Positions 1 through 32,223 of a DNA stretch of 54,895 nucleotides are shown here, one piece after another. How positions within the stretch are numbered: the first letter of the stretch is position 1; each line of letters starts with the position of its first letter. The stretch lies in contig NW_021833826.1 of the NCBI RefSeq assembly GCF_006345805.1, positions 1 to 54,895 on the forward strand, in the 5' to 3' direction. A program made the translations under genes and the position numbers. Source of the stretch: Octopus sinensis. Taxonomy: Eukaryota. The notes beneath the pieces are model-generated. The model was not told the origin of the DNA. It saw only the letters and a program-made list of their open reading frames with translations, and made no database searches.

Positions 1-640
1 GTGTATGATTGTGTTCAGTCAAGGTACTCCTTCGAGAGAAAGATTTACCACAGATGTTACAATGATATGGCTTCTCACCTGTATGAACACGTTTGTGATT
101 AGTTAGGGAGCTATTATGTGAAAATGATTCACCACAGATATCACAATGATATGGATTTTCCCCTGTATGAACGCGTTTATGATCAGACAAGTGGCTACTA
201 CGAGAGAATGATTTACCACAGATGTCACAATGATATGGTTTTTCTCCAGTATGTGTACGTTTGTGTCTAAACAAGTCATTACTTTGAGAGAATGATTGAC
301 CACAGATATTGCAATGATATGGCTTCTCACCTGTATGAGTACGCCTGTGCATAGTCACATGGCCACTTTCAGAAAATGATTCACCACAGATGTCACAATG
401 ATATGGTTTTTCTCCCGTATGTGTACGTACATGCCTAGTCAAAGAACTACTTTGAGAGAATGATTTACCACAGACATCACAGTGATGTGGTTTCTCACCT
501 GTATCAATGCATTTGTGTTTGGTCAAGACTGTTTCTTCAGTGAATAATTTACCACAGATATCACAGTGATGTTGCCTCTCACCTGAATCAGGTTTGTTTG
601 GTTTTCTTAAATCATTCATTATAAGATAATAATTTCTCAT
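1..640 (-). CDS. Z1: tandem C2H2 zinc-finger protein, 5' part; runs off the left edge
   Basis: Manual translation from ATG 640 (MRNYYLI) and ATG 619 ([44 protein letters not shown]...). Open to the window edge with one degenerate and about six canonical fingers joined by TGEKP-type linkers. Missing from the ORF track, presumably because no stop lies inside the window. Confidence 0.92.
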   Translation of the reverse strand, partial: MRNYYLIMNDLRKPNKPDSGERQHHCDICGKLFTEETVLTKHKCIDTGEKPHHCDVCGKSFSQSSSLTRHVRTHTGEKPYHCDICGESFSESGHVTMHRRTHTGEKPYHCNICGQSFSQSNDLFRHKRTHTGEKPYHCDICGKSFSRSSHLSDHKRVHTGENPYHCDICGESFSHNSSLTNHKRVHTGEKPYHCNICGKSFSRRSTLTEHNHT

Positions 641-1371
641 ACGTATCACAATGATAATGATTTTTTCATTTCTATGAATATATCTGTGTTCAGTATTTTC
701 AGAGAATAATTTAACACTATGTGTCTTTCGTGTGTGTTCTTGTTTAACATCTAAAATGGCAGATGTAGACTGTTAACACTTTCATAAAGTTATCCAAGCT
801 TAATTAACCAAGCAATCACCTTCACTACATTCGAAACAGTTCAGTTGTGTCAGTATTTTCAGAGAATAATTTAACACTATGTTCTTGCTTAACATCTAAA
901 ATGGCAGATGTAAACAGTTAAAACTTTTGTAAATTTATCCAAGCAATCACCTTTTTTACATTCCAAACAGTGAAGGCAACAAAAAAGTTGCTCTTAATTC
1001 CATCGTAGAAGAAATATTTTCTTATCGTTTGTCGTTGATGCGTTGATGAATGTGCCTTATGAATATATGGCCTTCCATTAATTGATGAAAGTCAATCAAA
1101 ATATCAGAGGCATGTTTAAATGAAGAGATTTCTTTAACGTCAACATGATGTGATATTCTGAAGTAGAAAAAAAGAAGCAGTGAGATAAAGAGAATGATTA
1201 AACAACATAGTAATTCAACATTGCAAATCTTACAACATCAACACTGTCATCCATTTAATGTCTATGTTTTCAGGGGTCAGATTCCATTGAGGCTTTGAAA
1301 CTTTCACAACATTCTGTATATAGATGAAGCGTTTCCACATTTCTCTAAATTCTTACCTGTTTTCTTTGGTA

Positions 1372-1541
1372 TGAAACCACCTCAATTCTGGGAAGAGGGT
1401 ATTTTCAAGTTAAAGGAAAGATGGAGACGCATTGTGCAACAAAACGGTTCATATTTGGTTGATTAAAAATGTATTGGCAAGTATTTATTGACCTTTGTCT
1501 TTCCTTCAAAAGTCGGCACGAACTTTCCGGACAACCCAATA
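1372..1541 (+). mobile_element. Mariner-like transposon 3' end fragment
   Basis: Encodes KPPQFWEEGIFKLKERWRRIVQQNGSYLVD*, a typical mariner transposase C-terminus, followed by a TIR-like end (...gcacgaactttccggacaacccaa) and TA. Confidence 0.75.
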
Positions 1542-1808
1542 CATATGCAATAATACGTTATACTAGCAGAATCGTTCACATGCCGAACAAAATGCATAAC
1601 AGCATTTCGTCCGTCTACACTCTAAAAGTTCAAATCCCATCCAGGTAGAATTTGGCTTTCATCCTTTCGAGGTAAAAACAAACAAGAAACATTAGCGCAC
1701 ATTGTTCCATGGAAGCGACGTCCGATTCTTCCGCCAATTTTCTGAACTCGTGTCTAAAGTACAAAAAATTATTCTCATCAACACTATTATTATTATTATG
1801 ATAGGCTA

Positions 1809-2039
1809 AGGCGGCGAACTGGCAGAAACGTTAGCACGCCGGGCGAAATGCGTAGCCGTATTTCGTCTGCCGTTACGTTCTGGGTTCAAATTCCGCCGAG
1901 GTCGACTTTGCCTTTCATCCTTTCGTGGTCGATAAATTAGTACCAGTTACGCACTGGGATCGATGTAATTGACTTAATCCGTCAGTCTGTCCTTGTTTGT
2001 CCACTCTGTGTTTAGCCCCTTGTGGGTAGTAAAGAAATA
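1809..2039 (+). mobile_element. tRNA-derived SINE, family B, in a (TAT)n tract
   Basis: Head ggcggcgaactggcagaaacgttagc, B-box gggttcaaattcc, central gtcgactttgcctttcatcc, 3' end gtagtaaagaaata; several homologous copies in the window. Confidence 0.85.
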
Positions 2040-2069
2040 TATTATTATTATTATTATTATTATTATAGC

Positions 2070-2700
2070 GACCCCGAAACGAAGGAAACTCCTGACTGAA
2101 AATACGGCCGAGGTCGACTTTGCCTTTCATCCCTTTCGGCAAATACTGGGTTCCATATATTCGACTTCGTTCTCCCCTCAAACACTGCAGGCCTTGGCAA
2201 AATTTCTAACCTACATCATTACTATTAATATAACCTCTTAAACAACAGGACAACGTTAATTAATATGGTATTCTTCAATCGGTTTCACCTCATTTTACTA
2301 ATTAATCAATTAATTAAACTATTTTACTCTCGTATTACCAATTAATTTCCTTTATATCACATGTAATAGTTGATAATAGGTTTTCCTAAACAACAGATCA
2401 ACATTTCAGTTTGGAAGTTATTAATTAAGACGAGCAAATTATATTTTCTAATTGTTGTCAGGTTCCCGCTTCGAAAAATAATTACTGTAACATCATTATT
2501 ATTAGTAGTAGTAGTATTATCACCTTTACAGCCTTAAAGGAAATCTTTATCAACTTACCGTATTCACAATAAGGAACGAGTCAGTGAAGCAGTAATTAAG
2601 CACCTTAATTAAGAATTTAAAAGAAGCGAGATTGAAGTGTTGTAGAGGTTATTTCCCTTTACATGATTTTCTTTCTTCCAATAGATGGCTCCACTGATTT
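2070..2700 (-). other. Conserved upstream block with candidate splice donor for Z1 (intron 2558 to 1158)
   Basis: Reverse strand reads gaatacg|GTAAGT at 2558-2553. Homologous blocks lie upstream of Z2, Z3, Z6 and Z7 on the same strand as those genes. Confidence 0.5.
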
Positions 2701-2744
2701 TTCTTTGTCCCTTTCTGTCAGGAGCCTCCCTTCAACTTTTTTCA

Positions 2745-2943
2745 AATTTTCACCTCAATAGACGTCATTGATTGGTTGAAATTGAAGAAAAAAACAGCAA
2801 ATATCTTAGAAACCATAGAATTTTCTCAATAAAGCCAAGAGAAAAATAATTTTTTCAAACACATTCTACCAGTATACGAAGTTTAAAAGTGTTTAGTTAC
2901 GTAGAAATTATTAAAAAAACTGCCGTTCAAACCGAAAAGATCC
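2745..2943. mobile_element. Partial GGATC-terminal MITE (one TIR)
   Basis: Ends in ...gccgttcaaaccgaaaagatcc, matching the full copies at 12988 and 15957. Confidence 0.75.
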
Positions 2944-2989
2944 CAAATTTCCTCCAATTATTTGAATCTAAACATTTTAATTCCTTTTT

Positions 2990-3355
2990 GTATGATTGTA
3001 TTTAAATTCTCCAGTAGAGCCATCTATTGGAGCATAGCAGAAATACAATCGTGTAAAGGGAAATAACAACACAACACCTCAACCTCGCTTCTTTTAAATT
3101 CTTAATTAAGGTGCTTAATTACTGATTCAGTGACTCGTTGCTTATTTGTGAATACGGTAAGTTGATAAAGATTTCCTTTAAGGCTGTAAAGGTGATACTA
3201 CTACTACTAATAATAATAATAATGATGTGAATAATAGAATTCTGTGAACTTCTCGATGTTACAGTAATTATTTTTCGAAGAGGGAACCTGACAACAATTA
3301 AGAAAATATATTTACTCGTCTTAATTAATAACTTCCAAACTGAAATGATGATTAC
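2990..3355 (+). other. Conserved upstream block with candidate donor for Z2 (intron 3157-4064)
   Basis: gtgaatacg|GTAAGT at 3157; possible acceptor ttctccAG at 3013-3014; inverted relative to the block at 2280-2700. Confidence 0.5.
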
Positions 3356-4468
3356 ATACTTTTTTGTTACCAAAATCTTTTCGGGGACTGTGGGATATCG
3401 TAGAATTTCGGGTAAGCTTTGATACTTTCACCTGAACGATCTTCTTTAACGTAAAAAAATAATCGGGTCAAAATAAAGCGTTTGACCCGATTATAAAAAC
3501 AAAAAGAAAATAGGTGTAAAACAACTTGCCTTAAACGAATATGACAAAAAAATGCGCGAAATGGGACTCGGGGGGGGAAAGGCCTCGGAAAATTCACATC
3601 GTGAGTTTCCGAAAGCGTCTGACCCGGGCACAAAAACAAAGAAAAAGAGAAGATAGTGTCTAAACCACAACATGAAAAGATCAATGTAGTCCCAAGTACC
3701 CTGACTTCGTAATGTACCGCGAACCCCTTCTTTTTATTAGGAAAATGGGGCGAGAAACCCCTATCCCGGTATCGTTGGAATTATTTTTATTCTCGTTTAA
3801 TGATTTATGGTGACCACCTTATGTGCCACGAAACACTTTTGGGGGTGTCGAGAAAACGGGGTATGGTGTGGGTGGAACCAACGGAAATTTCACCCTCCAA
3901 CCATTTTTCATATATTTTAAAGCTTTCAATGCCTCAATGAACCCCGACCCCTGCAGATATTGACATTAAATGGATGACAGTGTTGATGTTGTAAGATTTG
4001 CAATGTTGAATTACTATGTCGTTTAACGATTCTCTTTATCTCACTGCTTCTTTTTCTATTTCAGAATATCACATCATGTTGACGTTAAAGAAATCTCTCC
4101 ATTCAGATGTGCCTCTGATATTTCTATTGACTTTCATCAATAAAGAAGACCATATATTCATAAGGCACATTCATTAATGCATCAACGACAAACGATAAGA
4201 AAATATTTCTTCTACGATGGAATTGATAGCAACATTCACTTGTCTTCGCTGTTTGGAATGTAGAGAAGGTGATTGCTTGGTTAATTAAGCTTGGATAAAT
4301 TTACAAAAGTTTTAACTGTTTACATCTACCGTTTTAGATATTAAGCAAGAACACACACGAAAGACACATAGTGTTAAATTATTCTCTGAAAATACTGAAC
4401 ACAGATATATTCATAGAAATGAAAAAATCATTATCATTGTGATACATATGAGAAATTAGTATCTTATA

Positions 4469-5692
<1,224 letters not shown>

Positions 5693-6135
5693 CCGTATGA
5701 ATATCAAAATTATTACAACATACCAATTAATGAATATTTTGTCTGCTAAAAGACAGGGTTTATTCCTCTTCAAGCTTGACATTATCAACTTCAGTTTCTT
5801 GGATGTCAACATGAAATTCATGAATCACAACTTCAATATCATTTATATATCTAAATATATCAACACAGAGATGACTTTGGTTTCTGGAGAGGATTGTGCT
5901 GGATTTTTGAGGAATTTGTTATGTGAGAATAAAGGAATGGGAATAAGGAATAAAAGTTTTGACTGACATTGATTTTGTCTTTGTTGTGTTTTCATCATCA
6001 TCCTCTAACATCCATTTTTAGCATCCGTTTTCTATGCAGGCTTTGATGGGAAAGTGTGATATGAGCTGGCAAGCCAGAGTGCTGCTCCACGTTCCTGTCA
6101 GATTGGGCTTGGTTTCTTTGGCTCTATGCCTTTAA

Positions 6136-6357
6136 CCCTTTCAATACCAACCAAGCTGAAACCTGCTCTGGCTCTGTTGTACAAGTGTCTTGTTATCATA
6201 AATTTTGAATTAAAATCTTCCACGAAACCTCAGTCACAATTTATGTTCCTAACACTAGCTTAACAATAATGAAGTTATTTTACTAAATTCTTTGTTATAT
6301 TTAAAATTAATTGAAAGAAACACAGAGCATCTCAACAGAAATATGGTAATGAAAGGG
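6136..6357. mobile_element. piggyBac-like MITE
   Basis: TTAA|CCCTTT...AAAGGG|TTAA: TTAA target duplication with CCC/GGG termini. Confidence 0.75.
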
Positions 6358-7021
6358 TTAAGATACATGGCGCATTTTATAAATATTCCTGTTCAAGAAT
6401 CATAACAGTATCAAACATGTAGTAGCGCTTTCAGTTGTGTATTTAATTTGATATATGTATTTGTGTGAACATGATATCAGTCTGACAACTAAAATAATAG
6501 AAATCTTGTATTTTGAGTATTTTTTTCATATGAGTCAGAAGCATGGACTCCCTTCTACGAAGAAATAGAAAAACTAAAATTTTTTCGCATGTGGTGTTTG
6601 CACCACAACATATGCAGCAAAATGGCAAGATAAGACATTAAATGTAAAATCTTAGTAATATGGACTCATTTGCTTACAGCCAATAATATCTCACCATGAC
6701 CTTGTTGTCAAGTTAACGAACATACTCTACCAAATAAACTCAAGATGAAGAAAGGTGTTGTAAGTCGACTGATCACCAAGTTATGCCACATTTTAAAAGG
6801 CGACAAGTAATTAGATTTGCATCTATACCTGTTATCAGGGAAGTTAAGTTAATTTTTTGGCTCAAAAAGCGAAAAGCAGGGCCATGTAGGGGGACATGGA
6901 GTTATGTACAGGGAGGGTGATCATGCCATTTGTGGTCAACGGAGACTTTGAAACTAGCAGTCGTTGGCAGCTTATTCCACTGATCCGTAACCCGGACGGA
7001 GAAAGCCCCTCTCCTTCAATT

Positions 7022-7250: not shown

Positions 7251-7524
7251 CTGGACTCTTTCGAGATGATGGTGGGTAGAGGGTGATGTGCTAGCAACCC
7301 TCTGTTTTACAAAATAAACAACAACACAAATAACTACGCAGAGGCAGCCATGGTTGGAACAAGAACAGGCATTATTAAAAGAGAAATAGAAGCATGGTCA
7401 TTCCTTACTCAAGTGATTGTATCTTATCGCTCATCACTTGTTATGTGCTTAGGAGAATATTAGATTTATAAAACCTAAAATTCACTCATATAAATCTAAT
7501 ATTCTCCTATCCTTCCTTAATACC

Positions 7525-7734
7525 TATTTCTTTACTACCCACAAGAGGCTAAACACAGAGAGGACAAACAAACAGATTAAGTCGATTATATAGACTGGTA
7601 CTTAATTTATCGACTCCGAAAGGATGAAAGGCAAAGTCGACCTCGGCGGAATTTGAACTCAGAGCCTAACAGCAGACGAAATACTGCCAAGCATTTCGCC
7701 CGGCGTGCTAACGCTTCCGCCAGCTCACCACCTT
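7525..7734 (-). mobile_element. SINE family B with 16-bp TSD
   Basis: Reverse complement of the family B consensus; atccttccttaatacc at 7509-7524 and 7736-7751. Confidence 0.88.
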
Positions 7735-7769
7735 GATCCTTCCTTAATACCAGTTCCCATATGCTGCTC

Positions 7770-8140
7770 ATATCTGCACTCGGTCTGCTTAGGAGGTTGT
7801 TGTGTCCTAGAATATGTGTTGCTTCTTTTAGTTTTCTTCTATTCCAGTGGTGTTCTCTGTCTACTATTTTAACTTCATCCCACAGTGGGAGGAGGTCGCC
7901 ATATTTCCATACATAATCAGTTATACCCAATTTATCAATATCTCCCTGTGTCACAGCTTTGCGATGTTCCTCTACCCTTATTTTGAGGGGACGGCATTTT
8001 TGGCTTTTGTATACCCTACCACAGCTGCATGGGATGGAATACATGCAGTTTTTGGCCATATTTTCTTCTGTTGGTAGTTTTACTTGAAGGAGATATTTGC
8101 GAAGTGTTCTGTTACTCTTGAATACTGTCCTGATGTCATG
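7770..8140 (-). mobile_element. Penelope-like element GIY-YIG endonuclease fragment
   Basis: MYSIPCSCGRVYKSQKCRPLKIRVEEH...WDEVKIVDREHHWNRRKLKEATHI matches the degenerate PLE GIY-YIG pattern. Confidence 0.8.
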
Positions 8141-8155
8141 GAATAGCTGTAAACA

Positions 8156-17426: not shown

Positions 17427-17439
17427 TAATTACGCTACA

Positions 17440-20585: not shown

Positions 20586-21806
20586 ATGAATGATTTAAGA
20601 AAACCAAACAAACCTGATTCAGGTGAGAAGCCATATCACTGTGATATCTGTGGTAAAACATTCACTGAAGAAACAGTCTTGACCAAACACAAATGCATTG
20701 ATACAGGAGAGAAATCACATCACTGTGATATCTGTGGTAAATCATTCTCTAAAAATAGTCATTTGACTCGTCACAAACATATTCATACTGGAAACAAAGC
20801 ATATCACTGTGATGTCTGTGGTAAATCATTTTCCCGAAATTGTCACTTGATTAATCACATACGTATTCATACAGGGGAAAGACCATATCGTTGTGATATC
20901 TGTGGTGAATCATTTTCTCAAAGGAATCACTTGACTAAACACAAACTTACGCATACAGGAGAGAAAGCATATCATTGTAATATTTGCGGTAAATCATTCT
21001 CTCAAAGTAGTTCTTTGACTATTCACGTACGTACACATACAGGAGAGAAGCCATATCATTGCAATATCTGTGGTAAATCATTCTCTCGAAGTAGTGACTT
21101 GTATAGACACAAACGTACACATACGGGAGAAAAACCATATCATTGTGATATCTGTGGTAAATCATTCTCTCGAAGTAGTGACTTGTATAGACACAAACGT
21201 ACACATACGGGAGAAAAACCATATCATTGTGACTTCTGTGGTAAATCATTTTCTGAAAGTGGTCACTTGACTAATCACATACGTATTCATACTGGGGAAA
21301 ATCCATATCATTGTGATATCTGTGGTGAATCATTTTCTCATAATAACTCTTTAACTTATCACAAACGTGTTCATACAGGTGAGAAGCCATATCATTGTGA
21401 TATCTGTGGTAAATCTTTCTTTCTAAATAGTAACTTAACAACACACAAACGTATTCACACAGGAGAGAAGCCATATCATTGTGATATCTGTGATAAATCA
21501 TTCTCTAGAAATAATCATTTGACTCGTCACAAACATATTCATACTGGAGAAAAACCATATCTTTGTGATATCTGTGATAAATCATTTTCATGTAATAATG
21601 ACTTGAGTAAACATAAACGTATCCATACTGGGGAAAAGCCATATCAGTGTGATATCTGTGGCAAATCATTCTCTCATAGTACCACTTTAACTAGTCACAA
21701 ACGTATTCATACAGGAGAAAAGCCATGTCATTGTAATATCTGTGGTAAATCATTCTCTCAAAAAGGCTACTTAAGTACACATTGGAGTATTCATACACAA
21801 GTGTAA
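20586..21806 (+). CDS. Z4: intact C2H2 zinc-finger protein, 406 aa (13 canonical + 1 degenerate finger)
   Basis: Track [19 protein letters not shown]...HTQV*; acceptor tttctatttcAG at 20117-20118. Confidence 0.95.
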
Positions 21807-22255
21807 CTGTATCAATATCAAAATTTATTAAAACATGACAACAATTATGAACATTTTGTCTGCTAAAAGACAGGGTTTATTCCTCTTCAAGCTTGATATT
21901 ATCAACTTCAGTTTCTTGGATGTCAAAATGAAATTCATGAATCACAACTTCAATATCATTTATATATCTAAATATGTCAACACAGAGATGACTTTGATTT
22001 CTGAAGAGGATTGTGCTGGATTTTTGAGGAATTTGTTATGAGAGAATAAAGGAATGGGAATGAGGAATAAAAGTTTTAAGTGACATTGATTTTGTCTTTG
22101 TTGTGTTTTCATCATCATCATCCTCTAACATCCATTTTTAGCATCCGTCTTCTATGCAGGCTTTGATGGGAAAGTGTGACATGAGCTGGCAAGCCAGAGT
22201 GCTGCTCCATGTTCCTGTCAGATTGGGCTTCGTTGCTTTGGCTCTCTGCCCTTAA

Positions 22256-22976
22256 CCCCTTCAATACCAACCCATGTGAAACCACCTCTGGCTCTGTAGT
22301 GCAAATGTCTTGTTATCATAAATTTTGAATTAAAATCTTCCACCAAACCTTAGTCACAATTTATGTTCCTAACACTATCTTAATGATAATGAAGTTATTT
22401 TACTAAATTCTTTGTTATATTTAAAATTAATTGAAGGAAACACAGAGCATCTCAACAGAAGTATGCTAACAAAAGGGTTAAAATATATAATAGAGAAACA
22501 ATTCTTAACCCTTTTGATACCAACCTACCTGAAACCACCTCTGGCTCTGTAGTGCAAATGTCTTGTTATCATAAGTTCTGAATTAAAATCTTCCATCAAA
22601 CCTTAGTCTCATTTTATGTTCCTAACACTATCTTAATGATAATGAAGTTATTTTACTAAATTCTTTGTTATATTTAAAATTAATTGAAAGAAACAGCATC
22701 TCAACAGAAGTATGCTAACAAAAGGGTTAAAATATATAATAGAGAAACAATTCTTAACCCTTTTGATACCAACCTACCTGAAACCACCTCTGGCTCTTTA
22801 ATATAAATGTCTTGTTATAAATTTTGAATTAAAATCTTCCACCAAATCTTACTCATAATTTATGTTCCTAACACTAGCTTAACGATAATGAAGTTATTTT
22901 ACTAAATTCTTTGTTATATTTAAAATTAATTGAAGGAAACACAGAGCATCTCAACAGAAATATGGTAATGAAAGGG
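22256..22976. mobile_element. Three tandem piggyBac-like MITEs
   Basis: 22256-22477, 22509-22726 and 22758-22976, each TTAA|CCC...GGG|TTAA, separated by an identical 23-bp spacer. Confidence 0.78.
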
Positions 22977-23409
22977 TTAAGATACATAGCGCATTTTATA
23001 AATATTCCTGTTCAAGAATCATAACAGTATCAAACAAGTAGTAGCGCTTTCAGTTGTGTATTTAATTTGATATATGTATTTGTGTGAACATGATATCAGT
23101 CTGACAACTAAAATAATAGAAATCTTGTATTTTGAGTATTTTTTTATATGAGGCAGAAGCATGGACTCCCCTCTACGAAGAAATAGAAAAGCTGAAATTT
23201 TTTCGCATGTGGTGTTTCAAGCACAACATATGCAGCAAAATGGCAAGATAAGACATTAAATGTAAAAATTTTAGTAAAATGTGATATGTCCAGTATCCAA
23301 GGCATACGGATGAGAATTCAGTGCAGATGGGTAGGAGATGTTTTCCAAAGACGAAATGATCACATTCCAAAAATTCTTCTGTAAGGCCAACAAGTGGCAG
23401 AGGAACTCG

Positions 23410-24320
23410 TCTGGTCCCCGTGCCGGTGGCACGTAAAGAGCACCATCCAAGCGTGGTCGCTGCCAGACTCCTCTGGCACCTGTTGCTCGATTAAAGGCGG
23501 TGCTCCAGCATGGCTGCGGTCAAATGACTGAAACAAGTAAAAGAGTAACACTTTTGTTCCTGGTTAATTTAACGTATATATTTCTTTACTGGCCACAAGG
23601 GGCTAAACATACAGGGAACAAAGGGATTAAGTCGATTACATTGACCCCAGTGCGAAACTGGTACTTTATTTGTAGACCCCGAAAGGATGAAAGGCAAAGT
23701 CGACCTTGGCGGAATTTGAACTCAGAACGTAACGGCAGACGAAATACCTATTTCTTTACTACCCACAAGGGGCTAAACACAGAGGGAACAAACAAGGACA
23801 GACAAAGGGATTAAGTCAGTTACATCGACCCTAGTGCGTAACTGGTACTTAATTTATTGACCACGAAAGGATGAAAGGCAAAATCGACCTCGGCGGAATT
23901 TGAACTCAGAACGTAACGACAGACGAAATACTGGTAAGCGATTCGCCCAGCGCACTAACGTGTCTGCCAGCTTGCCGCTTTTTTAAATTTTACGTATAGC
24001 TTAAGGTGCAGGCTCAGTGGTTAGAGCGTCGAGCTTACGATCATGAGGTTGTGAGTTCAAATCCCGGACCGGGCTGCGTGTTGTGTTCTTGAGCAAGACA
24101 CTTTATTTCACGTTGCTCCAATTCACTCAGCTGCAGAAATGAGTTGCGACATAACAGGTGCCAAGCTGTATCGGCCCCTTTGCCTTTCTCCTTGGATAAC
24201 ACTGGTATGCATGGGTGATTGCTGGTCTTCCATAAACAACCTCGCCCAGAATTGTGCCTGGGAGGGTATCTTTAGAGGTGCAATTCCATGGTCTGTGTCG
24301 TGACCGAAGTGGTCTCAAGG
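23410..24320. mobile_element. SINE cluster (D and A fragments, two minus-strand B copies, one C copy)
   Basis: Family motifs in succession; the family C head ggctcagtggttagagc...gagttcaaatcc with CORE-like gttcttgagcaagacact starts at ~24005. Confidence 0.75.
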
Positions 24321-24539
24321 TCCACAACATGGTGGGAGATAGAGAGGGTGGGTCATGATGAGTATTCCAGATAACGTCTGGATAGAATGCGACGTCACAT
24401 GTGGGATATTCAAAGTGTAATTAGCTTTAATGATAACAAAGTGGGAGGCGGCCCCATGACACTGTGTATATTTCAATGGAAGCATCCTCACCACAACTGA
24501 ATGGATGGTTATGAAACAATAGAGGGGCAGTCATCGTTA

Positions 24540-25288
24540 ATCGCCTGGAAGCCTTTCAGCAACATGCAACCAAGAGAATACCCTCCATCAGGCATTTGCC
24601 ATATTCTGAAAGCCTTACTTCCCTGGGCATAGATACATTGAAACTCTGACTTGGCAGATACCCATAAAATTATTAACCATCTTACTAACAATAAGTCTGA
24701 GCACCTTTTCAAACTCCATCCATCTAACACCCATGGACATGTTTACAAAGCCAGAAAACAGCACAGCTCCCATGACTTTTGGAAACATTTTAGAATACCC
24801 TCCATCAGGCATTTGCCATATTCTAAACGCCTTACTTCCCTGGGCATGGACACATTGAAACTCCGTCTGGCAGCTGACTTGGCAGACACCCATAAAATTA
24901 TCAACCATCTTACAAACAATAACTCTGAGTACCTTTTCAAACTCCACCTGTCTAACACCTGTGAACATGTTTACAAAGTCAGAAAACAGCACAGTTCCCA
25001 TGACTTTCGGAAACATGTTTTCACGCTAAGAGTTGCTGAAGTATAGAACAAAACGCCAGCATCAGTTGTTAGTTGTCGGACCACTGCATCCTTCAAAACT
25101 TCCATGCTTCCTGAGATTCTCCAACACTACACCTGACTTTCTCCCCTCCATACACATGCAAGCATCTATCTGACTCATACACTGTTCGCTTCCCAGACAT
25201 TTGTACATTACTGCATATGCTTTATACGCACTTTTGACAAGTTGTGGTGCACCTGAGCACTGTATACAATAATTTCATTATTATTATT
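24540..25288 (+). mobile_element. CR1-clade LINE 3' fragment with internal duplication
   Basis: RLEAFQ..ATKRIPSIRHLPYS.RL..LG.DTLKLR...HSSHDFRKH.FTLRV motif; 3' end aataatttcattattatt. Confidence 0.82.
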
Positions 25289-26407
25289 AGATCAGGGTGA
25301 AGTGTGGAGGAATGATAGTGACCAGAATGTAAGGAAGTGAAGGACCGGAAGTGGAAAAACACGATGTCGTGTATCTTACTTTCCCTTGCTTTTCCCTCTG
25401 GCTGAGTAGACCTGTATCTCCCCTATAGCATCAGACGTGGGTGACATGCAACATATTTACATCTATACATATGTTGGCACAAACCGAAAAGATCCTTATC
25501 CATTTTATAGCGGAGCGACTATCATTGTGGAGCACTGACTTAATGACACACTATAATTTCATCAGTATGAAAGAAAGAGGGGTCACCATCTTGTTCGTAA
25601 CAACAAGAAAATAGAAGTTCACGAGACGTTTGTAATAAGTCATAACTCCAAGCTTAAAACATTACATGAATACCGTAAATCCTTGAGTATAATCCACACT
25701 TTTTTCCCCAAAATTTAAAGGTCAAAATCCCTAGTGCATACTATATACGAGGTTAAAAATGAAAAACATTTTCTAAGCAATGTCCGAGTCTCTGCTGTCC
25801 GGCAATGTTTACTTGATGCATTTTGTGATGTCGGGTGCAAAAATACGTTAAGCTAAGCCTGAAAGCAATGAAGTCATAAAAGAATCATCCATAACTTGCA
25901 GTAAGAAACATTTATTAAAATAAAAGCATTCAGAACACAGGATAACATGTAACAAAAACAATTTGCAAACATATTTACATTCCCATATAACAGTTAAGAA
26001 CATCACCATTATTGTATTACGCATGCACGGAAGTGTTTGTTCAACTGGGTGCTGCTGGCTTAATTATGCATGGATTGTGCTTAATAGTTTAGCGCTAATA
26101 GTTCATCCTGCTGAATTTTTGGAAAGCATTCACATTTCATTTGAAAAACATGTCCTACCAATCTTCACTGAATTCTCATCAACATGCTTTGAATACTGGA
26201 CATATCACATTTTTCTAAGATTTTTACATTTGATGTCTTATTTTGCCATTTGGTTGCATATGCTATGGTGCATACACCACATTTGAAAGGTTTGGAGATT
26301 TTCTATTTCCCTATCGAAGTGAGTCCCTGCTTCTGCCCCAGACATAAACACGCTCAAAATACGAGACTTGTATACACTTATTCTAGCTATCAGACTGACA
26401 TCCTGTC

Positions 26408-26450
<43 letters not shown>

Positions 26451-26463
26451 TTATATCAAATTA

Positions 26464-26813
26464 CAAAATAAGAAAATGGAGGAACAGATTAATTTCAATC
26501 ATCAACTTCCAGATAATACCAATTCATATAATTTATTAATTAATTATTTAGGAACATCCAGATCAAACAGAATAAAACAGTACACATCAATGAGTAAGAT
26601 AATACCATAAGAACAATACATATAAATAAATATAAATATAAAAATATAAAATGTTCTTATGGTATTATATTACTCATTGATGTGTACTGTTTTGTTCTTT
26701 ATTATTCTGTTTGATCTGGATATTCCTAAATAATTAGTTAATAAATTATATGAACTGGTATTATCTGGAAGTTGATGATTGATAGAAATCTATTCCTTCA
26801 TTTTCTTATTTTG
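26464..26813. mobile_element. AT-rich palindromic MITE flanked by TA
   Basis: ~150-bp arms starting caaaataagaaaatg and ending cattttcttattttg; second copy at 38675-39018. Confidence 0.7.
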
Positions 26814-27119
26814 TATTATGAATTTGAGGTAAAACATTTTACCTTTGCCCATATAATACATGAATTAATTGCATTGCAATTCTTAGCATTTATGTATTAG
26901 CCTTTCTGGGTACTTTACTGGCAGTATATTGGATAAATGATATCCCATAGTGGGTTACACTCATAACCCCTATCTCACTTTATGTATCAAATTAAATACA
27001 CAACTGAAAGCGCTACGACTTGTTACATGCTGTTACGATACTTGAACAGGAATATTTATAAAATGCGCCATGTATATTAAGAGCATATAACCAAAGAAAC
27101 CAAGCCAAACCCACATTTG

Positions 27120-27315
27120 ACTGATATTTGTCCTCATCTTGTTGTTCACACAACATTTCAGCTGATATATTCTCCAGCCTTCATCAGGTGTATTGGGGAA
27201 ATTTTGAAGCTGGGTTCTCGTTCCTAAGGTATTTCCCCAAGACACCTGATGAAGGCTGGAGAGTATACCAGTTGAAATACTGTGTTAACAACAAGATGAG
27301 GACGAATATCAGTCT
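27120..27315. ncRNA. Inverted pair of degenerate type I hammerhead ribozyme motifs (Penelope pLTR-like)
   Basis: Plus strand 27241-27286: gacac-CTGATGA-a-ggctgg-agagtata-ccagtt-GAAA-tact-gtgtt. Minus strand 27192-27147: tacac-CTGATGA-a-ggctgg-agaatata-tcagct-GAAA-tgtt-gtgtg. Confidence 0.55.
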
Positions 27316-27775
27316 AAAGTAAATAACGTACATAATTCCGAATCTCTCAAATATAGAACGACACAATCCAGGTCTGACTGGAACCTGGAGAAGCACTCTG
27401 GCTTGCCAGCACCTGTCACACTTTCCCATCCATGCCTGGATGGTAAGGATGATGGAGATGATGATGATGATCAAAACACAACAAAGACAAAATCAATGTC
27501 ACTTAAAACTTTTATTCCTTATTCCCATTCCTTTATTCTCTTATAACAAATTCCTGAAAAATCCAGCACAATCATCTTCAGAAGTCAAAGTCATCTCTGT
27601 GTTGATATATTTAGATATATAAATGATATTGAAGTTGTGATTCATGAATTTCATGTTGACATCCAAGAAACTGAAGTTGATAATGTCAAGCTTGAAGAGG
27701 AATAAACCCTGTCTTTTAGCAGACAAAATATTCATAATTGTTGTCCTGTTGTAATAAATTTTGATATTGATACTG

Positions 27776-28407
27776 TTACACCTGTGTATGAATACTCACA
27801 TGTGTACTTAAGTGGCTTTTTTGAGAGAAAGATTTACCACAGACATCACAGTGATATGGTTTCTCTCCTGTATGAATACGTTTATGGACAGTCAAGTCAC
27901 TATTTCTAGAGAATGATTTACCACAGATATTACAATGATATGCTTTCTCTCCTGTATGTGTATGTTTGTGATGAGTTAAATCGCTATTTAGAGAAAATGA
28001 TTTACCACAGATATCGCACTGATATGGTTTCTCTCCAGTATGGAGAAATTTGTGACTAGTCAACTGACTATTTCTAGAGAATGATTTCCCACAGATAATG
28101 CAATGAAATGGCTTCTCCCCTGTATGTGTATCTATGTGACCAGTCAAGGAACCACTTCGGGAGAATGATTTACCACAGACATCACAGTGATATGCTTTGT
28201 CTCCAGTATGAATATGTTTGTGACGAGTAAAGTTACTATTTTCAGAGAACGATTTACCACAAATATCACAATGATATGGCTTCTCTCCTGTATGTGTACG
28301 TACATGACTAGTCAAGTGACTACTTGAGAGAATGATTTACCACAGTTATCACAGTAATATGGCCTCTCACCTGAATCAGGTGTGTTTGGTTTTCTTAAAT
28401 CATTCAT
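27776..28407 (-). pseudogene. Z5: 7-finger C2H2 gene with a single 1-bp frameshift in finger 1 (pseudogene or assembly error)
   Basis: ATG 28407 [16 protein letters not shown]; tctcaa-gtagt at ~28323 lacks one A of caaagt; the remainder (track ORF 27776..28315) is intact to HTQV*. Acceptor at 28823-28822. Confidence 0.8.
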
Positions 28408-29014
28408 TATAAGATACTAATTTCTCATACGTATCACAATGATAATGATTTTTTCAATTCTATGAATATATCTGTGTCCAGTTGTGTCAGTATTTTCAGA
28501 GAATAATTTAACACTATGTGTCTTTCGTGTGTGTTCTTGCTTAATATCTAAAACGGTAGATGTAAACAGTTAAAACTTTTGTAAATTTATCCAAGCTTAA
28601 TTAACCAAGCAATCACCTTCTCTACATTCCAAACAGCGAAGACAAGTGAGTGTTGCTGTCAATTCCACCGAGAAAAAATATTTTCTTATCGTTTGTCGTT
28701 GATGCATTGATGAATGTGCCTTATGAATATATGGTCTTCCTTTAATTGATGAGAGTCAATAGAAATATCAGAGGCACATCTGAAAGGAGAGATTTCTTTA
28801 TCGTCAACATGATGTGATATTCTGAAACAGAAAAAAAGAAGCAGTGAGATAAAGAGAATCATTAAACGACATAATAATTCAACATTGCAAATCTTACAAC
28901 ATCAACACTGTCATCCACTTAATGTCAATGTCTGCAGGGGTCGGGGTTCATTGAGGCATTGAAAGTTTTAAAATATATGAAAATGGTTGGAGGGTGAAAT
29001 TTCCGTTTTTTATA

Positions 29015-29720
29015 TTATTGTATTTAAATTCTCCAGTAGAGCTATTTATTGGAGCATAGCAGAAATACAATCGTGTAAAGGGAAATAACCACACAACACC
29101 TCAACCTCGCTTCTTTTAAATTCTTAATTAAGGTGCTTAATTACTGATTCGTTGCTTATTTGTGAATACGGTAAGTTGATAAAGATTTCCTTTAAGGCTG
29201 TAAAGGTGATACTACTACTACTACTAATAATAATAATGTAAATGATAGAATTATGTGAACTTCTCTCGATATTACAGTAATTATTTTTCGAAGCGGGAAC
29301 CTAACAACAATTAAGAAAATATGTTTACTCGTCTTAATTAATAACTTCCAAACTGAAATGTTGCTCTGTTGTTTATGAAAACCTATGAATCACCGTTACA
29401 TGTGATATAAAGGAAATTAATTGGTAATACGAGAGTAAAATAGTTTAATTGATTAATTAGTAAAATTAGGGGAAACCGATTGAAGAATACCATATTAATT
29501 AACGTTGTCCTGTTGTTTAAGAGGTTATATTAATAGTAATGATGCAGGTTTGAAATTTTGCCGAGGCCTGCAGTGTTTGAGGGGAGCACGAAGTCGAATA
29601 CATAGAACCCAGTATTTCCCGAAAAGGATGAAAGGCAAAGTCGACCTCGGCCGTATTTTCAGTCAGGAGTTTCCGCTGAGGTCGACAGTGACTTTCCTTC
29701 GTTTCGGGGTCGCTATAATA
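29015..29720 (+). other. Conserved upstream block with candidate donor for Z6
   Basis: gtgaatacg|GTAAGT at 29171; homologous to 2070-2700 (inverted) and 2990-3355 (direct). Confidence 0.5.
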
Positions 29721-29727
29721 ATAAAAA

Positions 29728-30388
29728 GGCAATCTTTCGTCTCTAGTAGACCTTTCCGAAAAAATTTTTTTTGTTTTACATATGGGCTTGCGGGAAATTT
29801 TGAAGTAATGAGAGCGAAAGAGACTAAGAGAAAGCCATTTTTATGACGAGGGAAGTTCTTTTGAAGTTACCGTGCATGGCAAGCATTGATGTACATGTGT
29901 GTGTGTGTGTTTGATGAGGTGTGGGAGACAGACAGTATGTTGTGTAAGTGAAGTGCTTCTGTTAGTGTGTGTGAAAGAAAGAGATAACTGAAATTTTTTA
30001 CTTGGTGTATGTGTATATGTATGTATATTACTTGAAAAGTTCCCGCAAGCCCATATGTAAAAAAAAAATTTTTTTACGGTGTGGTGTGGTGTTGAAGGAG
30101 TGTGACGGAGCGGGAGGGAGCGGAAGTGGGTCTTGCAGGGCGCATGCGCCGGCGGAAGCTGAAGTGACAGACAGAACGCACGTGCGGCATTGACCAAGCC
30201 AGACAGACTTGAGAACGACGCCAACACGACAAGAGGCTAGCAAGTTGGCTGAAGGCGAATCCGACTTCATCTCCTCAGGTAAGACCAAATTACACTTCTA
30301 ATTCTTTCCTTGTTCTGTTACGCTCCTTTCACCACACGTATTACATAGGGAAATCGACGTAAAGTTCTACTAGAGACGAAAGATCGCC
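29728..30388. mobile_element. Merlin-like MITE (GGC[A/G]ATCTT TIR) carrying an internal cargo
   Basis: 23-bp TIR with 22/23 match (29728-29750, 30366-30388); flanks aataaaaa and aataataa (7/8 TSD); same family as 48021-48280. Confidence 0.75.
30080..30284 (+). promoter_or_regulatory. Candidate promoter, first exon and splice donor
   Basis: GC-rich; ETS/GABP-type GCGGAAGTG at 30120, NRF1-type GCGCATGCGC at 30140, CGGAAG at 30153, donor CAG|GTAAGA at 30279. Confidence 0.5.
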
Positions 30389-30641
30389 AATAATAATAGT
30401 GTTGATGAGAATAATCTTTTGTACTTTAGACACGAGTTCAGGAAATTGGCGGGAGAAGCGGACGTCGCTTCCATGGAACAATGTGCGCTAATGTTTCTTG
30501 TTTGTTTTTACCTCGAAAGGATGAAAGCCAAATTCTACCTGGATGGGATTTGAACTTTTAGAGTGAAGACGGACGAAATGCTGTTATGCATTTTGTTCGG
30601 CATGTGAACGATTCTGCTAGTATAACGTATTATTGCATATG

Positions 30642-30811
30642 TATTGGGTTGTCCGGAAAGTTCGTGCCGATTTTTGAAGGAAAGAAAAAGGTCAATAAAT
30701 ACTTGCCAATACATTTTTAATCAACCAAATATGAACCGTTTTGTTGCACAATGCGTCTCCATCTTTCCTTTAACTTGAAAATACCCTCTTCCCAGAATTG
30801 AGGTGGTTTCA
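30642..30811 (-). mobile_element. Mariner-like 3' fragment (paralog of 1372-1541)
   Basis: Reverse complement of the 1372-1541 element within duplicated flanks. Confidence 0.75.
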
Positions 30812-31404
30812 TGCCAAAGAAAAAAGGTAATGGAGGAAAACAGGTTAGAATTTAGAGAAATGTAGAAACGCTTCATCTATGTACAGAATGTTGTGAAAGT
30901 TTCAAAGCCTCAATGGAATCTGACCCCTGAAAACATAGACATTAAATGGATGACAATGTTGATGTAAGATTTGCAATGTTGAATTACTATGTCGTTTAAC
31001 GATTCTCTTTATCTCATGCTTCTTTTTTTCTACTTCAGAATATCACATCATGTTGACGTTAAAGAAATCTCTTCATTCAGATGTACCTCTGATATTTTGA
31101 TTGACTTTCATCAATTAAAGGAAGACCATATATTCATAAGGCACATTCATCAACGCATCAATGACAAACGATAAGAAAATATTTCTTCTACGATGGAATT
31201 AAGAGCAACTTTTTTGTTGCCTTCACTGTTTGGAATGTAAAAAAGGTGATTGCTTGGATAAATTTACAAAAGTTTTAACTGTTTACATCTGCCATTTTAG
31301 ATGTTAAGCAAGAACATAGTGTTAAATTATTCTCTGAAAATACTGACACAACTGAACACAAATACATTCATAGAAATGAAAAAATCATTATCGTTGGGAT
31401 ACGT

Positions 31405-32223
31405 ATGAGAAGTTTTTATCTTATAATGAATGATTTAAGAAAACCAAACAAACCTGATTCAGGTGAGAGGCCATATCACTGTGATATCTGTGGTAAATTA
31501 TTCACTGAAGAAAGAGTCTTGACCAAACACAAATGCATTGATACAGGAGAGAAACCACATCATTGTGATGTCTGTGGTAAATCATTCTCTCAAAGTAGTT
31601 CTTTGACTAGGCACGTACGTACACATACAGGAGAAAAACCATATCATTGTGATATCTGTGGTGAATCATTTTCTGAAAGTGGCCACGTGACTATGCACAG
31701 GCGTACTCATACAGATGAGAAGCCATATCATTGCAATATCTGTGGTAAATCATTCTCTCGAAGTAGTGACTTGTTTAGACACCAGCGTACACATACGGGA
31801 GAAAAACCATATCATTGTGATATCTGTGGTGAATCATTTTCTCAAAATAACTCTTTAACTTATCACAAACGTGTTCATACAGGTGAGAAGCCATATCATT
31901 GTAACATCTGTGGTAAATCTTTCTTTATAAATAGTAACTTAACAATACACAGACGTATTCATACAGGAGAGAGGCCATATCATTGTGATATCTGTGATAA
32001 ATCATTCTCTACCAATAGTCATTTGACTCGTCACAAATATATTCATACTGGAGAAAAACCATATCATTGTGATATCTGTGATAAATCATTCTGTAGGAAT
32101 AGTGACTTGACTAAACATAAACGTATTCATACTGGAGAAAAACCATATCATTGTGATATCTGTGATAAACCATTCTCTAGGAATAGTGACTTGACTAAAC
32201 ATAAACGTATCCATACTGGATAA
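31405..32223 (+). CDS. Z6: C2H2 zinc-finger protein truncated by a nonsense codon (8 canonical + 1 degenerate finger); decayed remainder to 32438
   Basis: Track ORF; GAA>TAA in the TGEKP linker at 32221; a second TAA in the next linker; the terminal HTQV* remnant ends at 32438. Acceptor at 31037-31038. Confidence 0.85.

What the first reader, a model, noticed from the sequence alone, without database searches (positions are those of the whole stretch)
620..31425. Head-to-head segment appears flipped between two gene pairs, giving chimeric ZNF genes
Seen: the Z1 5' flank (620-1790, including the mariner relic) is the reverse complement of the Z6 5' flank (30389-31425). The Z2 5' flank (3880-4470) is the reverse complement of the Z5 5' flank (28420-29005). 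Yet the 3' flank of Z2 resembles those of plus-strand Z4 and Z6 (piggyBac MITE and downstream sequence), while Z5's resembles Z7's. Z1 and Z6 share their first fingers (EE[T/R]VL, QSSSL, ESGHV), whereas later Z6 fingers resemble Z4 (RSSDL, [H/Q]NNSLTY, [L/I][14 protein letters not shown]). Inference: recombination between the inverted finger arrays flipped the 3-4 kb divergent segment, swapping 5' ends and N-terminal fingers onto new C-terminal arrays. This would be an inversion-based route to new DNA-binding specificities and could still be polymorphic.
Basis: partly seen in the sequence, partly recalled or inferred. Interest (0 to 1): 0.72.

Follow-up and report, generated by a model that had tools for sequence, protein, structure and literature searches.

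The report
Mosaic octopus zinc-finger gene cluster
In an octopus cluster of eight zinc-finger genes, the shared 5' region of one head-to-head gene pair is a 97% identical but reversed copy of that of another pair, so several genes are patchworks of their relatives; this is the usual block-swapping seen in such clusters, and a true in-place flip is not shown.

Summary
The window is an Octopus sinensis C2H2 poly-zinc-finger cluster (chromosome CM016885.1, about 12.06-12.11 Mb) with eight genes in four head-to-head pairs.

- The Z1-Z2 intergenic module (about 317-4545) is collinear with the reverse complement of the Z5-Z6 module (about 28330-31728). Substitution divergence is 2.4-2.8% in the two 5' flanks and 5.5% in the central shared element.
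- 3' flanks group by strand instead: Z2/Z4/Z6 against Z5/Z7.
- 5' and 3' trees conflict with 99-100% bootstrap support.
- Z6 switches from Z1-like to Z4-like within 31723-31746 (Fisher p = 1e-10).

Chimeric genes are therefore real. The proposed mechanism, one reciprocal crossover between the inverted finger arrays, fails its own predictions inside the window.
- The reversed block reaches three fingers into Z1/Z6 but ends inside the first finger of Z2/Z5.
- Z1 fingers 4-7 are not Z5-like.
- The module (2.6%) looks younger than the outer Z2/Z6 flank (4.6%) and array (about 9.5%).

I favour non-reciprocal copying, meaning ectopic gap repair or segmental duplication with junctions in conserved repeats. 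A second, direct 7-8 kb exchange between Z4 and Z6 adds to the mosaic. Z2, Z5 and Z6 are disrupted. The decisive evidence, Z1's 3' flank, lies outside the window.

The parts
1..619 (-). Z1, N-terminal part of a C2H2 poly-ZNF gene (ATG at 619-617). It has one degenerate finger plus six fingers and is cut off by the window start. The frame is open throughout the visible part.
   Evidence: Finger scan and translations. Z1.1-1.3 are 98/96/96% identical to Z6.1-6.3; Z1.4 and Z1.6 are 93-94% to Z4/Z6; Z1.5 has no close relative; Z1.7 is 89% to Z2.6.
620..1794 (-). Z1 5' flank ('a' type). It comprises the family-wide 5' core (to about 1364) and a Z1/Z6-specific extension (1364-1794, a possible mariner relic). 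It contains a 130-bp tandem duplication (about 685-971) and a Z2-like patch (about 601-800).
   Evidence: 839-1794 against 31357-30389, 2.4% substitutions. The patch and the duplication are seen. The extension matches only Z6.
1794..2044 (.). Multi-copy repeat inserted only in the Z1-Z2 intergenic region; absent from the Z5-Z6 one.
   Evidence: Other copies at 7518-7749, 9011-9230, 23749-23981 and 35027-35258.
2054..2696 (.). Central repeat-derived element, collinear in reverse orientation with 29727-29034.
   Evidence: 92-94% in the clean windows 2131-2430. Substitution divergence 5.5% over 383 bases. Other copies of this repeat in the window are only 67-84% identical.
2697..3879 (.). Stretch present only in the Z1-Z2 intergenic region. 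It holds a MITE-like repeat (2747-2950), a second oppositely oriented copy of one arm of the central element (2985-3352, 92.7% to 29007-29363 in direct orientation) and about 530 bp of other sequence.
3880..4468 (+). Z2 5' flank ('b' type), the reverse-complement copy of the Z5 5' flank.
   Evidence: 2.8% substitutions against 29007-28358. (Z2,Z5) has 100% bootstrap support. The upstream end at 3880/29007 is shared only by Z2 and Z5.
4469..5692 (+). Z2, a disrupted chimeric ZNF gene. The leader and first half of finger 1 are Z5-like (to about 4545). Fingers 2-5 are Z4-like (88-96%). Fingers 6-13 have no close relative and some are truncated. There is a frameshift after finger 5.
5693..6662 (+). 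Z2 3' flank ('alpha' lineage), with a piggyBac-like MITE at 6132-6361.
   Evidence: 95.1% to the Z6 flank and 93% to the Z4 flank; 4.6% and 5.3-5.5% substitutions respectively. Inverted termini and TTAA ends.
20586..21806 (+). Z4, an intact 406-aa gene with 14 fingers. It is the close relative of the 3' two-thirds of Z6 and of Z2 fingers 2-5.
21807..27775 (.). Tail-to-tail intergenic region between Z4 and Z5: the alpha flank of Z4, a middle part, and the 'beta' 3' flank of Z5 (27323-27775). It is a direct repeat of 32439-39593.
   Evidence: Divergence: 24791-26966 against 36957-39171 is 2.7%; beta proximal 3.1%; alpha Z4/Z6 2.7-4.1%.
27776..28407 (-). Z5, a disrupted ZNF gene with seven fingers. 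A 1-bp deletion in finger 1 puts the leader ATG out of frame. Its fingers have no relative above 90%.
28408..31425 (.). Z5-Z6 head-to-head intergenic module: the b-type flank (to 29007), the central repeat element (29007-29727), 660 bp found only here (29728-30388), and the a-type extension and core (30389-31425).
31426..32438 (+). Z6, a chimeric ZNF gene. It is Z1-like up to finger 3 and Z4-like from finger 4, with the switch within 31723-31746 (the linker between fingers 3 and 4). There are two in-frame TAA stops in linkers and a frame break near 32300.
   Evidence: Informative sites: 71:13 before the switch and 3:21 after it, Fisher p = 1e-10. Interval. Stops. The junction is present in three assembly records.
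32439..39593 (.). Tail-to-tail intergenic region between Z6 and Z7, a direct copy of 21807-27747. It includes the alpha flank with its MITE (32881-33110) and the beta flank of Z7 (39168-39593).
40029..41249 (-). Z7, an intact 406-aa gene. Its 3' flank is sister to that of Z5, but its 5' core shares almost no derived sites with Z5's.
   Evidence: Z5 5' informative sites 151:5 for Z2 over Z7; 3' sites 5:25. An exact product match identified the source genome.

Best explanation
The window is a lineage-specific octopus cluster of C2H2 poly-zinc-finger genes arranged as four head-to-head pairs. Its members are mosaics built by homology-guided, non-reciprocal copying between paralogs.

Two blocks of about the same age explain the finding.
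- Block 1 is the 3.4-4.2 kb bidirectional 5' module. It holds both 5' flanks, both leaders, three N-terminal fingers on one side and half a finger on the other. It is present twice in opposite orientation, Z1-Z2 and Z5-Z6.
- Block 2 is a direct 7-8 kb copy. It runs from finger 4 or 5 of Z6 (finger 6 or 9 of Z4) through the tail-to-tail intergenic region to the 3' UTR of Z7 (Z5).

Each block ends in the most conserved repeats: leader, finger scaffold, linker or 3' UTR. This is what ectopic gap repair, long-tract gene conversion or segmental duplication with homologous junctions would produce.

A head-to-head pair is bounded on both sides by mutually inverted, homologous leaders and fingers. A donor module can therefore be copied in either orientation, so a reversed module does not need a crossover inversion.

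What is shown: the blocks, their orientation, their divergence, the switch points and the incongruent trees. What is inferred: that copying, not an in-place flip, produced the reversal, and in which direction each copy went.
For: - Incongruent trees with high support, and triplet tests: Z6 p = 1e-10, Z2 p = 5e-16, Z5 p = 3e-21.
- The module is collinear in reverse through sequence that is not family-wide: the extension 1364-1794 and the central element 2054-2440.
- Block ends are asymmetric: three fingers on the Z1/Z6 side against half a finger on the Z2/Z5 side.
- The module's divergence is 2.4-2.8%. The outer Z2/Z6 flank is 4.6% and the outer Z2/Z6 fingers about 9.5%. The module therefore looks younger than what surrounds it in Z2.
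- An independent direct block of the same age exists (T1/T2 2.7%, beta 3.1%) and abuts the reversed block inside Z6.
- A recent small exchange between head-to-head partners is visible: Z1 601-780 is 94-98% identical to Z2 and shares a 9-bp deletion with it.
- The Z4 5' flank changes its nearest relative (Z3, then Z5/Z2, then Z1/Z6) over a few hundred bases.
Against: - The dating argument is modest: 2.6% against 4.6% is about 2.5 standard errors, and rates may differ between regions.
- The central element is more diverged (5.5%) than the two flanks of the same module.
- A PHI test on the 5' core alone shows no recombination signal (p = 0.73).
- Mismatch clustering in the Z1/Z6 flank is not significant (p = 0.07).
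- Copying a 3-4 kb module through non-homologous central sequence is a long tract for gene conversion.
- The 3' end of Z1, which would discriminate the models, is outside the window.
Confidence: 0.5

Rival explanations
1. The two pairs began as direct duplicates. A single intrachromatid crossover between the inverted finger arrays of one pair then flipped the intergenic module. This swapped 5' flanks and N-terminal fingers onto the other gene's C-terminal array.
For: - The module is reversed relative to the directly oriented alpha flanks of Z2 and Z6.
- Both block ends lie inside coding repeats that face each other as inverted repeats: Z1/Z2 82-84% over about 840 bp, Z5/Z6 82.5%.
- Head-to-head partners do exchange sequence.
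- Z4 and Z6, both on the plus strand, share the EETVL-type first finger and the alpha flank. That makes Z1-Z2 the odd pair.
Against: - The reciprocal predictions fail. The switch positions differ: finger 3/4 in Z1/Z6 against finger 1 in Z2/Z5.
- No Z5 finger is among the five best matches of Z1.4-1.7. Z2.2-2.4 are 87-90% to Z6, not about 97%.
- Both Z1 and Z2 carry the QSSSL / ESGHV / RS..LF / HNSSL finger set, which only one of them should have.
- The module is less diverged than the Z2/Z6 outer flank.
- The longest exact matches between partners are 46-106 bp and lie in the 5' cores, not in the arrays.
- Rescuing the model needs extra later conversions.
Confidence: 0.25
2. A larger inverted duplication copied Z5's 5' end, the intergenic module and the whole of Z6 to make Z1 and a proto-Z2. 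An unequal crossover or conversion with a plus-strand Z4-like gene then replaced everything 3' of Z2's first finger. The Z4/Z6 exchange later overwrote the 3' part of Z6 or Z4.
For: - Z1 stays collinear with the Z6/Z4-type array through finger 6 at 93-98%.
- Z2 from finger 2 to its 3' flank is collinear with Z4 from finger 5 to its flank at 86-96%.
- Each step is a standard event in tandem clusters.
Against: - Z1.5 has no counterpart, and Z1.7 is only about 80% identical to Z6.6/Z4.10.
- The model needs three events of nearly the same age.
- It overlaps with the best explanation and cannot be separated from it within the window.
Confidence: 0.15
3. Assembly artefact: long-read contigs were joined wrongly inside near-identical finger arrays, creating apparent chimeras.
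For: - The assembly holds three nearly identical records of this region.
- Two contigs begin exactly at the window start, inside the Z1 array. The arrays therefore did cause assembly breaks.
Against: - The Z6 junction and the whole 30-51 kb stretch agree in all three records, apart from one tandem-repeat unit.
- The blocks differ by 2-5%, with many indels and private transposon insertions. A mis-join of identical repeats would not produce that.
- The arrays are only about 1.2 kb, short enough for long reads to span.
Confidence: 0.05

Closest known systems
Tandem C2H2/KRAB zinc-finger clusters of vertebrates (for example human chromosome 19), which evolve by segmental duplication, finger gain and loss, and gene conversion (my own knowledge)
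   Same: - Lineage-specific tandem cluster of arrays with an 84-bp period.
- Birth-and-death evolution: 4 of 8 genes are disrupted.
- Paralogs whose 5', array and 3' parts have different nearest relatives.
   Different: - There is no KRAB or other effector domain. The coding region is a short leader plus fingers.
- The non-coding flanks are better conserved than the arrays.
- The cluster is organised as head-to-head pairs.
Inversions by non-allelic homologous recombination between inverted paralogs. Examples from my own knowledge: F8 intron 22, IDS/IDS2, FLNA-EMD. A screen of human gene-pseudogene pairs in opposite orientation is in the abstract of PMC12632684.
   Same: - Two inverted homologous repeats flank a few-kb segment.
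- The outcome would be reciprocal chimeric genes.
   Different: - Here the reciprocal signature is not seen.
- Only one outer flank can be checked.
- Both orientations have not been observed at one locus.
- Repeat identity between partners is only 82-84%, with exact matches of at most 106 bp.
Interlocus (ectopic) gene conversion and concerted evolution among paralogs, including between inverted copies, as in palindrome arms (my own knowledge; the abstract of PMC3966223 for Caenorhabditis paralogs)
   Same: - The nearest relative changes along a gene.
- Tract ends fall in conserved sequence.
- The tract is younger than its surroundings.
- A small recent patch links Z1 and Z2.
   Different: The main blocks are 3-8 kb and cross non-homologous sequence. 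That is long for conversion and shades into segmental duplication.
The cephalopod C2H2 expansion (PMC12513265; Albertin et al. 2015 from my own knowledge)
   Same: Same organism group and gene family. [quoted passage not shown]
   Different: That paper's text contains no mention of inversion, orientation, gene conversion or recombination. The fine-scale mosaic described here is not covered there.

Membership tests
C2H2 poly-zinc-finger genes | Tandem C-x2-C-x12-H-x3-H units joined by TGEKP-type linkers | tested here: met
   94 regular fingers in eight arrays; 84-bp periodicity; database relatives carry PF00096.
C2H2 poly-zinc-finger genes | Intact reading frame across the array in the chimeric members | tested here: not met
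   Z2 has a frameshift after finger 5 and truncated units. Z5 has a 1-bp deletion in finger 1. Z6 has two in-frame TAA stops and a frame break. Z1 is open as far as it can be seen.
NAHR inversion between inverted paralogs | Inverted homologous repeats flank the segment | tested here: met
   Z1 against the reverse complement of Z2 is 82-84% over about 840 bp; Z5 against the reverse complement of Z6 is 82.5%.
NAHR inversion between inverted paralogs | The segment is reversed relative to both outside flanks of a comparator locus | tested here: inconclusive
   Met on the right side, where the alpha flanks of Z2 and Z6 are direct repeats. The left side, Z1's 3' flank, lies outside the window, and attempts to fetch it failed.
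NAHR inversion between inverted paralogs | Reciprocal chimeras that switch at the same aligned position, with the outer parts matching the opposite partner | tested here: not met
   The switch is after finger 3 in Z1/Z6 but inside finger 1 in Z2/Z5. No Z5 finger is among the five best matches of Z1.4-1.7. Z2.2-2.4 are 87-90% to Z6.
NAHR inversion between inverted paralogs | Both orientations observed at one locus, in a population or in sister species | not testable with these tools
   The three assembly records fetched cover only about 29.6-51.3 kb of the window. No reads or other octopus genomes were reachable.
Ectopic gene conversion / non-reciprocal block copying | Phylogenetic discordance along the gene with localised switch points | tested here: met
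   Bootstrap 99-100% for conflicting groupings. Fisher tests give 1e-10 to 3e-21. The Z6 switch lies within 31723-31746.
Ectopic gene conversion / non-reciprocal block copying | The copied tract is younger than the sequence around it | tested here: inconclusive
   The module is at 2.4-2.8%, against 4.6% for the Z2/Z6 flank and about 9.5% for Z2.2-2.5 against Z6. However, the central element is at 5.5% and the flank difference is only about 2.5 standard errors.
Simple tandem duplication by unequal crossover | Everything between the two crossover partners is duplicated in order | tested here: not met
   The direct block 21.1-27.7 kb against 31.7-39.6 kb is followed by Z5 and its module in one copy. 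In the other copy it is followed by the unrelated Z7 array and its intergenic region. At 5'-core informative sites Z5 groups with Z2 151 times and with Z7 5 times.
piggyBac-type MITE | TTAA target-site ends and terminal inverted repeats starting CCC | tested here: met
   TTAACCCTTTCAATACCA ... TGGTAATGAAAGGGTTAA at 6132-6361, 32880-33111 and 22503-22982. The family assignment rests on my own knowledge of piggyBac ends.
mariner relic | Recognisable transposase remnant | tested here: inconclusive
   No Pfam match for the 44-aa peptide. The frame +2 peptide PPQFWEEGIFKLKERWRRIVQQNGSYLVD, followed by a stop codon, in 1330-1830 resembles mariner C-termini, from memory only.

The most novel reading that the evidence does not exclude
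The bidirectional 5' module of head-to-head octopus ZNF pairs behaves as a recurrently invertible cassette. Recombination between the facing leaders or fingers flips it in place, re-pairing promoters and N-terminal fingers with different C-terminal arrays. Both orientations may still segregate in Octopus sinensis.
Probability: 0.1. Interest if true: 0.6.

Novelty: new member of a known kind. Interest (0 to 1): 0.3.

Why it matters
Octopus genomes hold a very large, lineage-specific expansion of C2H2 zinc-finger genes, and how new members arise is poorly described. This window shows at base-pair resolution that paralogs in such a cluster are assembled from blocks with different histories. The junctions sit in the conserved leader, linker and 3' UTR repeats, and blocks can be installed in either orientation. 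That is a workable route to new finger combinations and new promoter-array pairings. Here, though, three of the four genes concerned are already disrupted, so the locus looks more like birth-and-death turnover than innovation. It also warns that trees built from one part of such genes will mislead.

Tried and rejected
- Extending the sequence to the left to read Z1's 3' flank failed. Exact-product look-ups for Z4, Z2, Z6 and two Z3 start variants found nothing on record. Only Z7 was found, and its loci cover about 29.6-51.3 kb.
- Two homology searches (Z4, and the visible part of Z1) returned only generic poly-ZNF proteins at 62% identity or less. They returned no cluster paralogs, so no Z1 protein id was obtained.
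- Pfam scans of the putative mariner peptide and three non-ZNF ORFs gave nothing.
- A PHI recombination test on the 5' core alone was not significant (p = 0.73). A mismatch-clustering test on the Z1/Z6 flank was also not significant (p = 0.07). I therefore do not claim pervasive micro-conversion inside the cores.
- The first MAFFT estimate of Z2/Z5 5' identity (90.5%) was depressed by non-homologous upstream sequence. Ungapped-column and local estimates replaced it (96.9%; 2.8% substitutions).
- Simple tandem duplication was rejected: the sequence after the second copy of the direct block is unrelated to that after the first.
- Independent short conversions of the two 5' cores were rejected, because the Z1/Z6-specific extension and the central element are also collinear in reverse.

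Full report
SOURCE AND LAYOUT. The window is AT-rich (33-48% G+C). It carries eight arrays of C-x2-C-x12-H-x3-H fingers with an 84-bp period. I label them as follows.
- Z1 (-) 1-619, cut by the window start
- Z2 (+) 4469-5692
- Z3 (-) 9481-10785
- Z4 (+) 20586-21806
- Z5 (-) 27776-28407
- Z6 (+) 31426-32438
- Z7 (-) 40029-41249
- Z8 (+) 48972-50893

They form four head-to-head pairs separated by tail-to-tail intergenic regions. The exact Z7 product is on record in assembly GCA_006345805.1. It occurs on chromosome CM016885.1 (12,058,458-12,079,678, reversed) and on two unplaced contigs. All three are 99.6-99.98% identical to the window. A paper names that assembly as Octopus sinensis. Z4 and Z7 are intact 406-aa genes. 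Z2, Z5, Z6 and Z8 have frameshifts or in-frame stops, and Z1 is open as far as it can be seen.

Self-comparison gives 839-1794 against 31357-30389 on the minus strand, 95.5% with gaps counted, or 23 substitutions in 952 bases. It also gives 3880-4519 against 29007-28358 on the minus strand, with 18 substitutions in 637 bases. Between these two flanks, the central element 2054-2440 matches 29727-29320 in the same reversed order, at 5.5% substitutions. The whole intergenic module of Z1-Z2 is therefore collinear with the reverse complement of the Z5-Z6 module. The exceptions are private insertions:
- 1794-2044 and 2697-3879, found only in Z1-Z2
- 29728-30388, found only in Z5-Z6

The stretch 1364-1794 matches no gene other than Z6, so the relation goes beyond the family-wide 5' core.

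On 515 ungapped 5'-core columns, Z1/Z6 are 95.1% and Z2/Z5 96.9% identical. The two types differ from each other by 8-10%. Z4 is about 90% identical to each of them and Z3 about 84%. A 23-bp deletion is shared only by Z1, Z2, Z5 and Z6.

The 3' flanks tell a different story. Z2/Z6 are 95.1% identical over 973 bp, Z4/Z6 95.0% and Z2/Z4 93%. All three share a TTAA-ended 230-bp element with inverted termini at the same position. Z5/Z7 are 96.7% and then 94.5% identical over more than 2.6 kb. The two groups differ by about 10% proximally and 22% distally.

DISCORDANCE IS STATISTICALLY SOLID. Neighbour-joining bootstraps give (Z1,Z6) 99% and (Z2,Z5) 100% for the 5' core. For the 3' flank they give (Z2,Z4,Z6) against (Z5,Z7) 100%. 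The triplet counts of informative sites are as follows (counts for Z6; other counts and all p values).
- Z6 agrees with Z1 rather than Z4 at 71:13 sites up to finger 3, and at 3:21 sites afterwards (p = 1e-10).
- Z2 agrees with Z5 rather than Z6 at 34:12 sites in the 5' core, and at 11:109 in the 3' flank (p = 5e-16).
- Z5 agrees with Z2 rather than Z7 at 151:5 sites in the 5' core, and at 5:25 in the 3' flank (p = 3e-21).

The Z6 switch lies within 31723-31746, in the linker and first cysteine codons between fingers 3 and 4.

A SECOND BLOCK ABUTS THE FIRST. From Z6 finger 4 or 5 onward, Z6 and everything downstream to the Z7 3' UTR (31.7-39.6 kb) is a direct copy of Z4 finger 6 or 9 through to the Z5 3' UTR (21.1-27.7 kb). 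The supporting figures are:
- fingers 96, 99, 92, 95 and 94% identical
- intergenic region 2.7% substitutions over 2164 bases
- beta flank 3.1%, and alpha flank 2.7-4.1%

Identity drops to about 81-86% where the Z5 and Z7 arrays begin. At that point Z7 has a private 407-bp insertion. This is not a simple tandem duplication, because what follows the two copies is unrelated.

TESTING THE FLIP MODEL. A single crossover between the inverted arrays of one pair makes two predictions. Both chimeras should switch at the same aligned position. Beyond that position, Z1 should match Z5 and Z2 should match Z6 at the module's identity. What is seen instead is listed below.
- The Z1/Z6 block runs through fingers 1-3 (98/96/96%) and decays only to 93% at Z1.4 and Z1.6. 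The Z2/Z5 block ends inside finger 1, at about 4545.
- Z1.4-1.7 have Z4, Z6 and Z2 as best matches (89-94%). Z1.5 has no close relative. No Z5 finger is among the five best matches of any of them.
- Z2.2-2.5 are 92/94/88/96% identical to Z4 but 87/90/89/95% to Z6.
- Z1 and Z2 both carry the QSSSL, ESGHV, RS..LF and HNSSL fingers. Under a reciprocal exchange only one of them should.
- No single switch position, equal or unequal, reconciles these facts without further events.
- The module (2.4-2.8%) is less diverged than the Z2/Z6 3' flank (4.6 +/- 0.7%). An in-place flip of directly duplicated pairs predicts equal ages.
- The present partners are poor crossover substrates. They are 82-84% identical, and their longest exact matches are 46-106 bp, all in the 5' cores and none in the arrays.

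BEST READING. The cluster is a patchwork made by non-reciprocal, homology-guided copying. Block ends fall in the most conserved repeats: leader, finger scaffold, linker and 3' UTR. Each head-to-head pair is bounded by mutually inverted homologous leaders and fingers. Ectopic repair or duplication can therefore install a donor module in either orientation, which gives a reversed module without a crossover.

Two further observations show exchange involving oppositely oriented genes. Z1 601-780 is 94-98% identical to Z2, shares a 9-bp deletion with it, and sits next to a 130-bp tandem duplication. The Z4 5' flank changes its nearest relative from Z3 to Z5/Z2 to Z1/Z6 within about 700 bp.

I hold this reading at about 0.5. 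The in-place flip stays at about 0.25, because it needs only added later conversions. A larger inverted duplication followed by replacement of Z2's 3' part is a close variant that I cannot separate from the best reading. Assembly error is unlikely. The blocks differ by 2-5% and carry private insertions, and the Z6 junction is the same in three records.

CAVEATS. The PHI test on the 5' core and the mismatch-clustering test were not significant. The central element is more diverged than the flanks of the same module. Copy direction cannot be inferred. The decisive sequence, Z1's distal array and 3' flank, lies outside the window, and both unplaced contigs also start there.

CONSEQUENCE AND CONTEXT. 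The chimeras recombine N-terminal fingers and 5' regulatory sequence with different C-terminal arrays. In principle that changes binding specificity and expression. Here, however, Z2, Z5 and Z6 are disrupted, so this locus shows turnover rather than demonstrated innovation.

Block exchange, gene conversion and finger shuffling are well known in vertebrate ZNF clusters, and inversions between inverted paralogs are well known in humans (my own knowledge; abstract of PMC12632684). A recent survey of cephalopod C2H2 expansions does not mention inversion, orientation or gene conversion. The case is therefore a new, well-resolved example of a known kind of process.

Noticed in passing
window 1-54895; L001-L003: The region is present three times in assembly GCA_006345805.1: chromosome CM016885.1 plus unplaced contigs VCDQ01008377.1 and VCDQ01005315.1, at 99.6-99.98% identity. 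Both contigs begin at the window start, inside the Z1 array. They are probably haplotigs or redundant contigs.
   Followed up: partly
window 36008-37440: A 476-bp tandem repeat, 3.0 copies, 96% matches. The chromosome record has one unit fewer than the window and the two contigs.
   Followed up: partly
window 13941-14742: A 73-bp tandem repeat, 11 copies, 99% identical, in the Z3-Z4 intergenic region.
   Followed up: no
window 43459-44082 and 44767-45381: A large inverted repeat with arms of about 620 bp, 97% identical, about 680 bp apart, in the Z7-Z8 intergenic region. The arms themselves contain 155-157-bp tandem units.
   Followed up: no
window 5720-5960, 21830-22080, 27500-27750, 32460-32700, 39350-39590: The first ~250 bp of the 3' UTR is 96-99% identical among Z2, Z4, Z5, Z6 and Z7. 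That is more conserved than the coding finger arrays (80-90%). It suggests a constrained or homogenised UTR element.
   Followed up: partly
window 39594-40000: A ~407-bp insertion lies directly after the Z7 stop codon. It is related to repeats at 33550-34421 and is absent from Z5.
   Followed up: no
window 685-971: A 130-bp tandem duplication in the Z1 5' flank. The distal copy is Z6-like. The proximal copy is Z2/Z5-like, with a ~30-bp stretch that resembles Z3.
   Followed up: partly
window 22251-22988: The piggyBac-like MITE region of the Z4 3' flank is repeated with a period of about 250 bp. The Z2 and Z6 flanks each have one copy.
   Followed up: no
window 49033-50868: The Z8 array contains an internal 420-bp (five-finger) duplication (49033-50448 against 49453-50868, 82%) and a frame break near 50230.
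   Followed up: no
window 7607-8203 (-), 33580-34200 (-), 43289-43807 (-): Three ORFs of 172-206 aa outside the ZNF genes have no Pfam match. The first lies within repeat-rich sequence between Z2 and Z3.
   Followed up: partly
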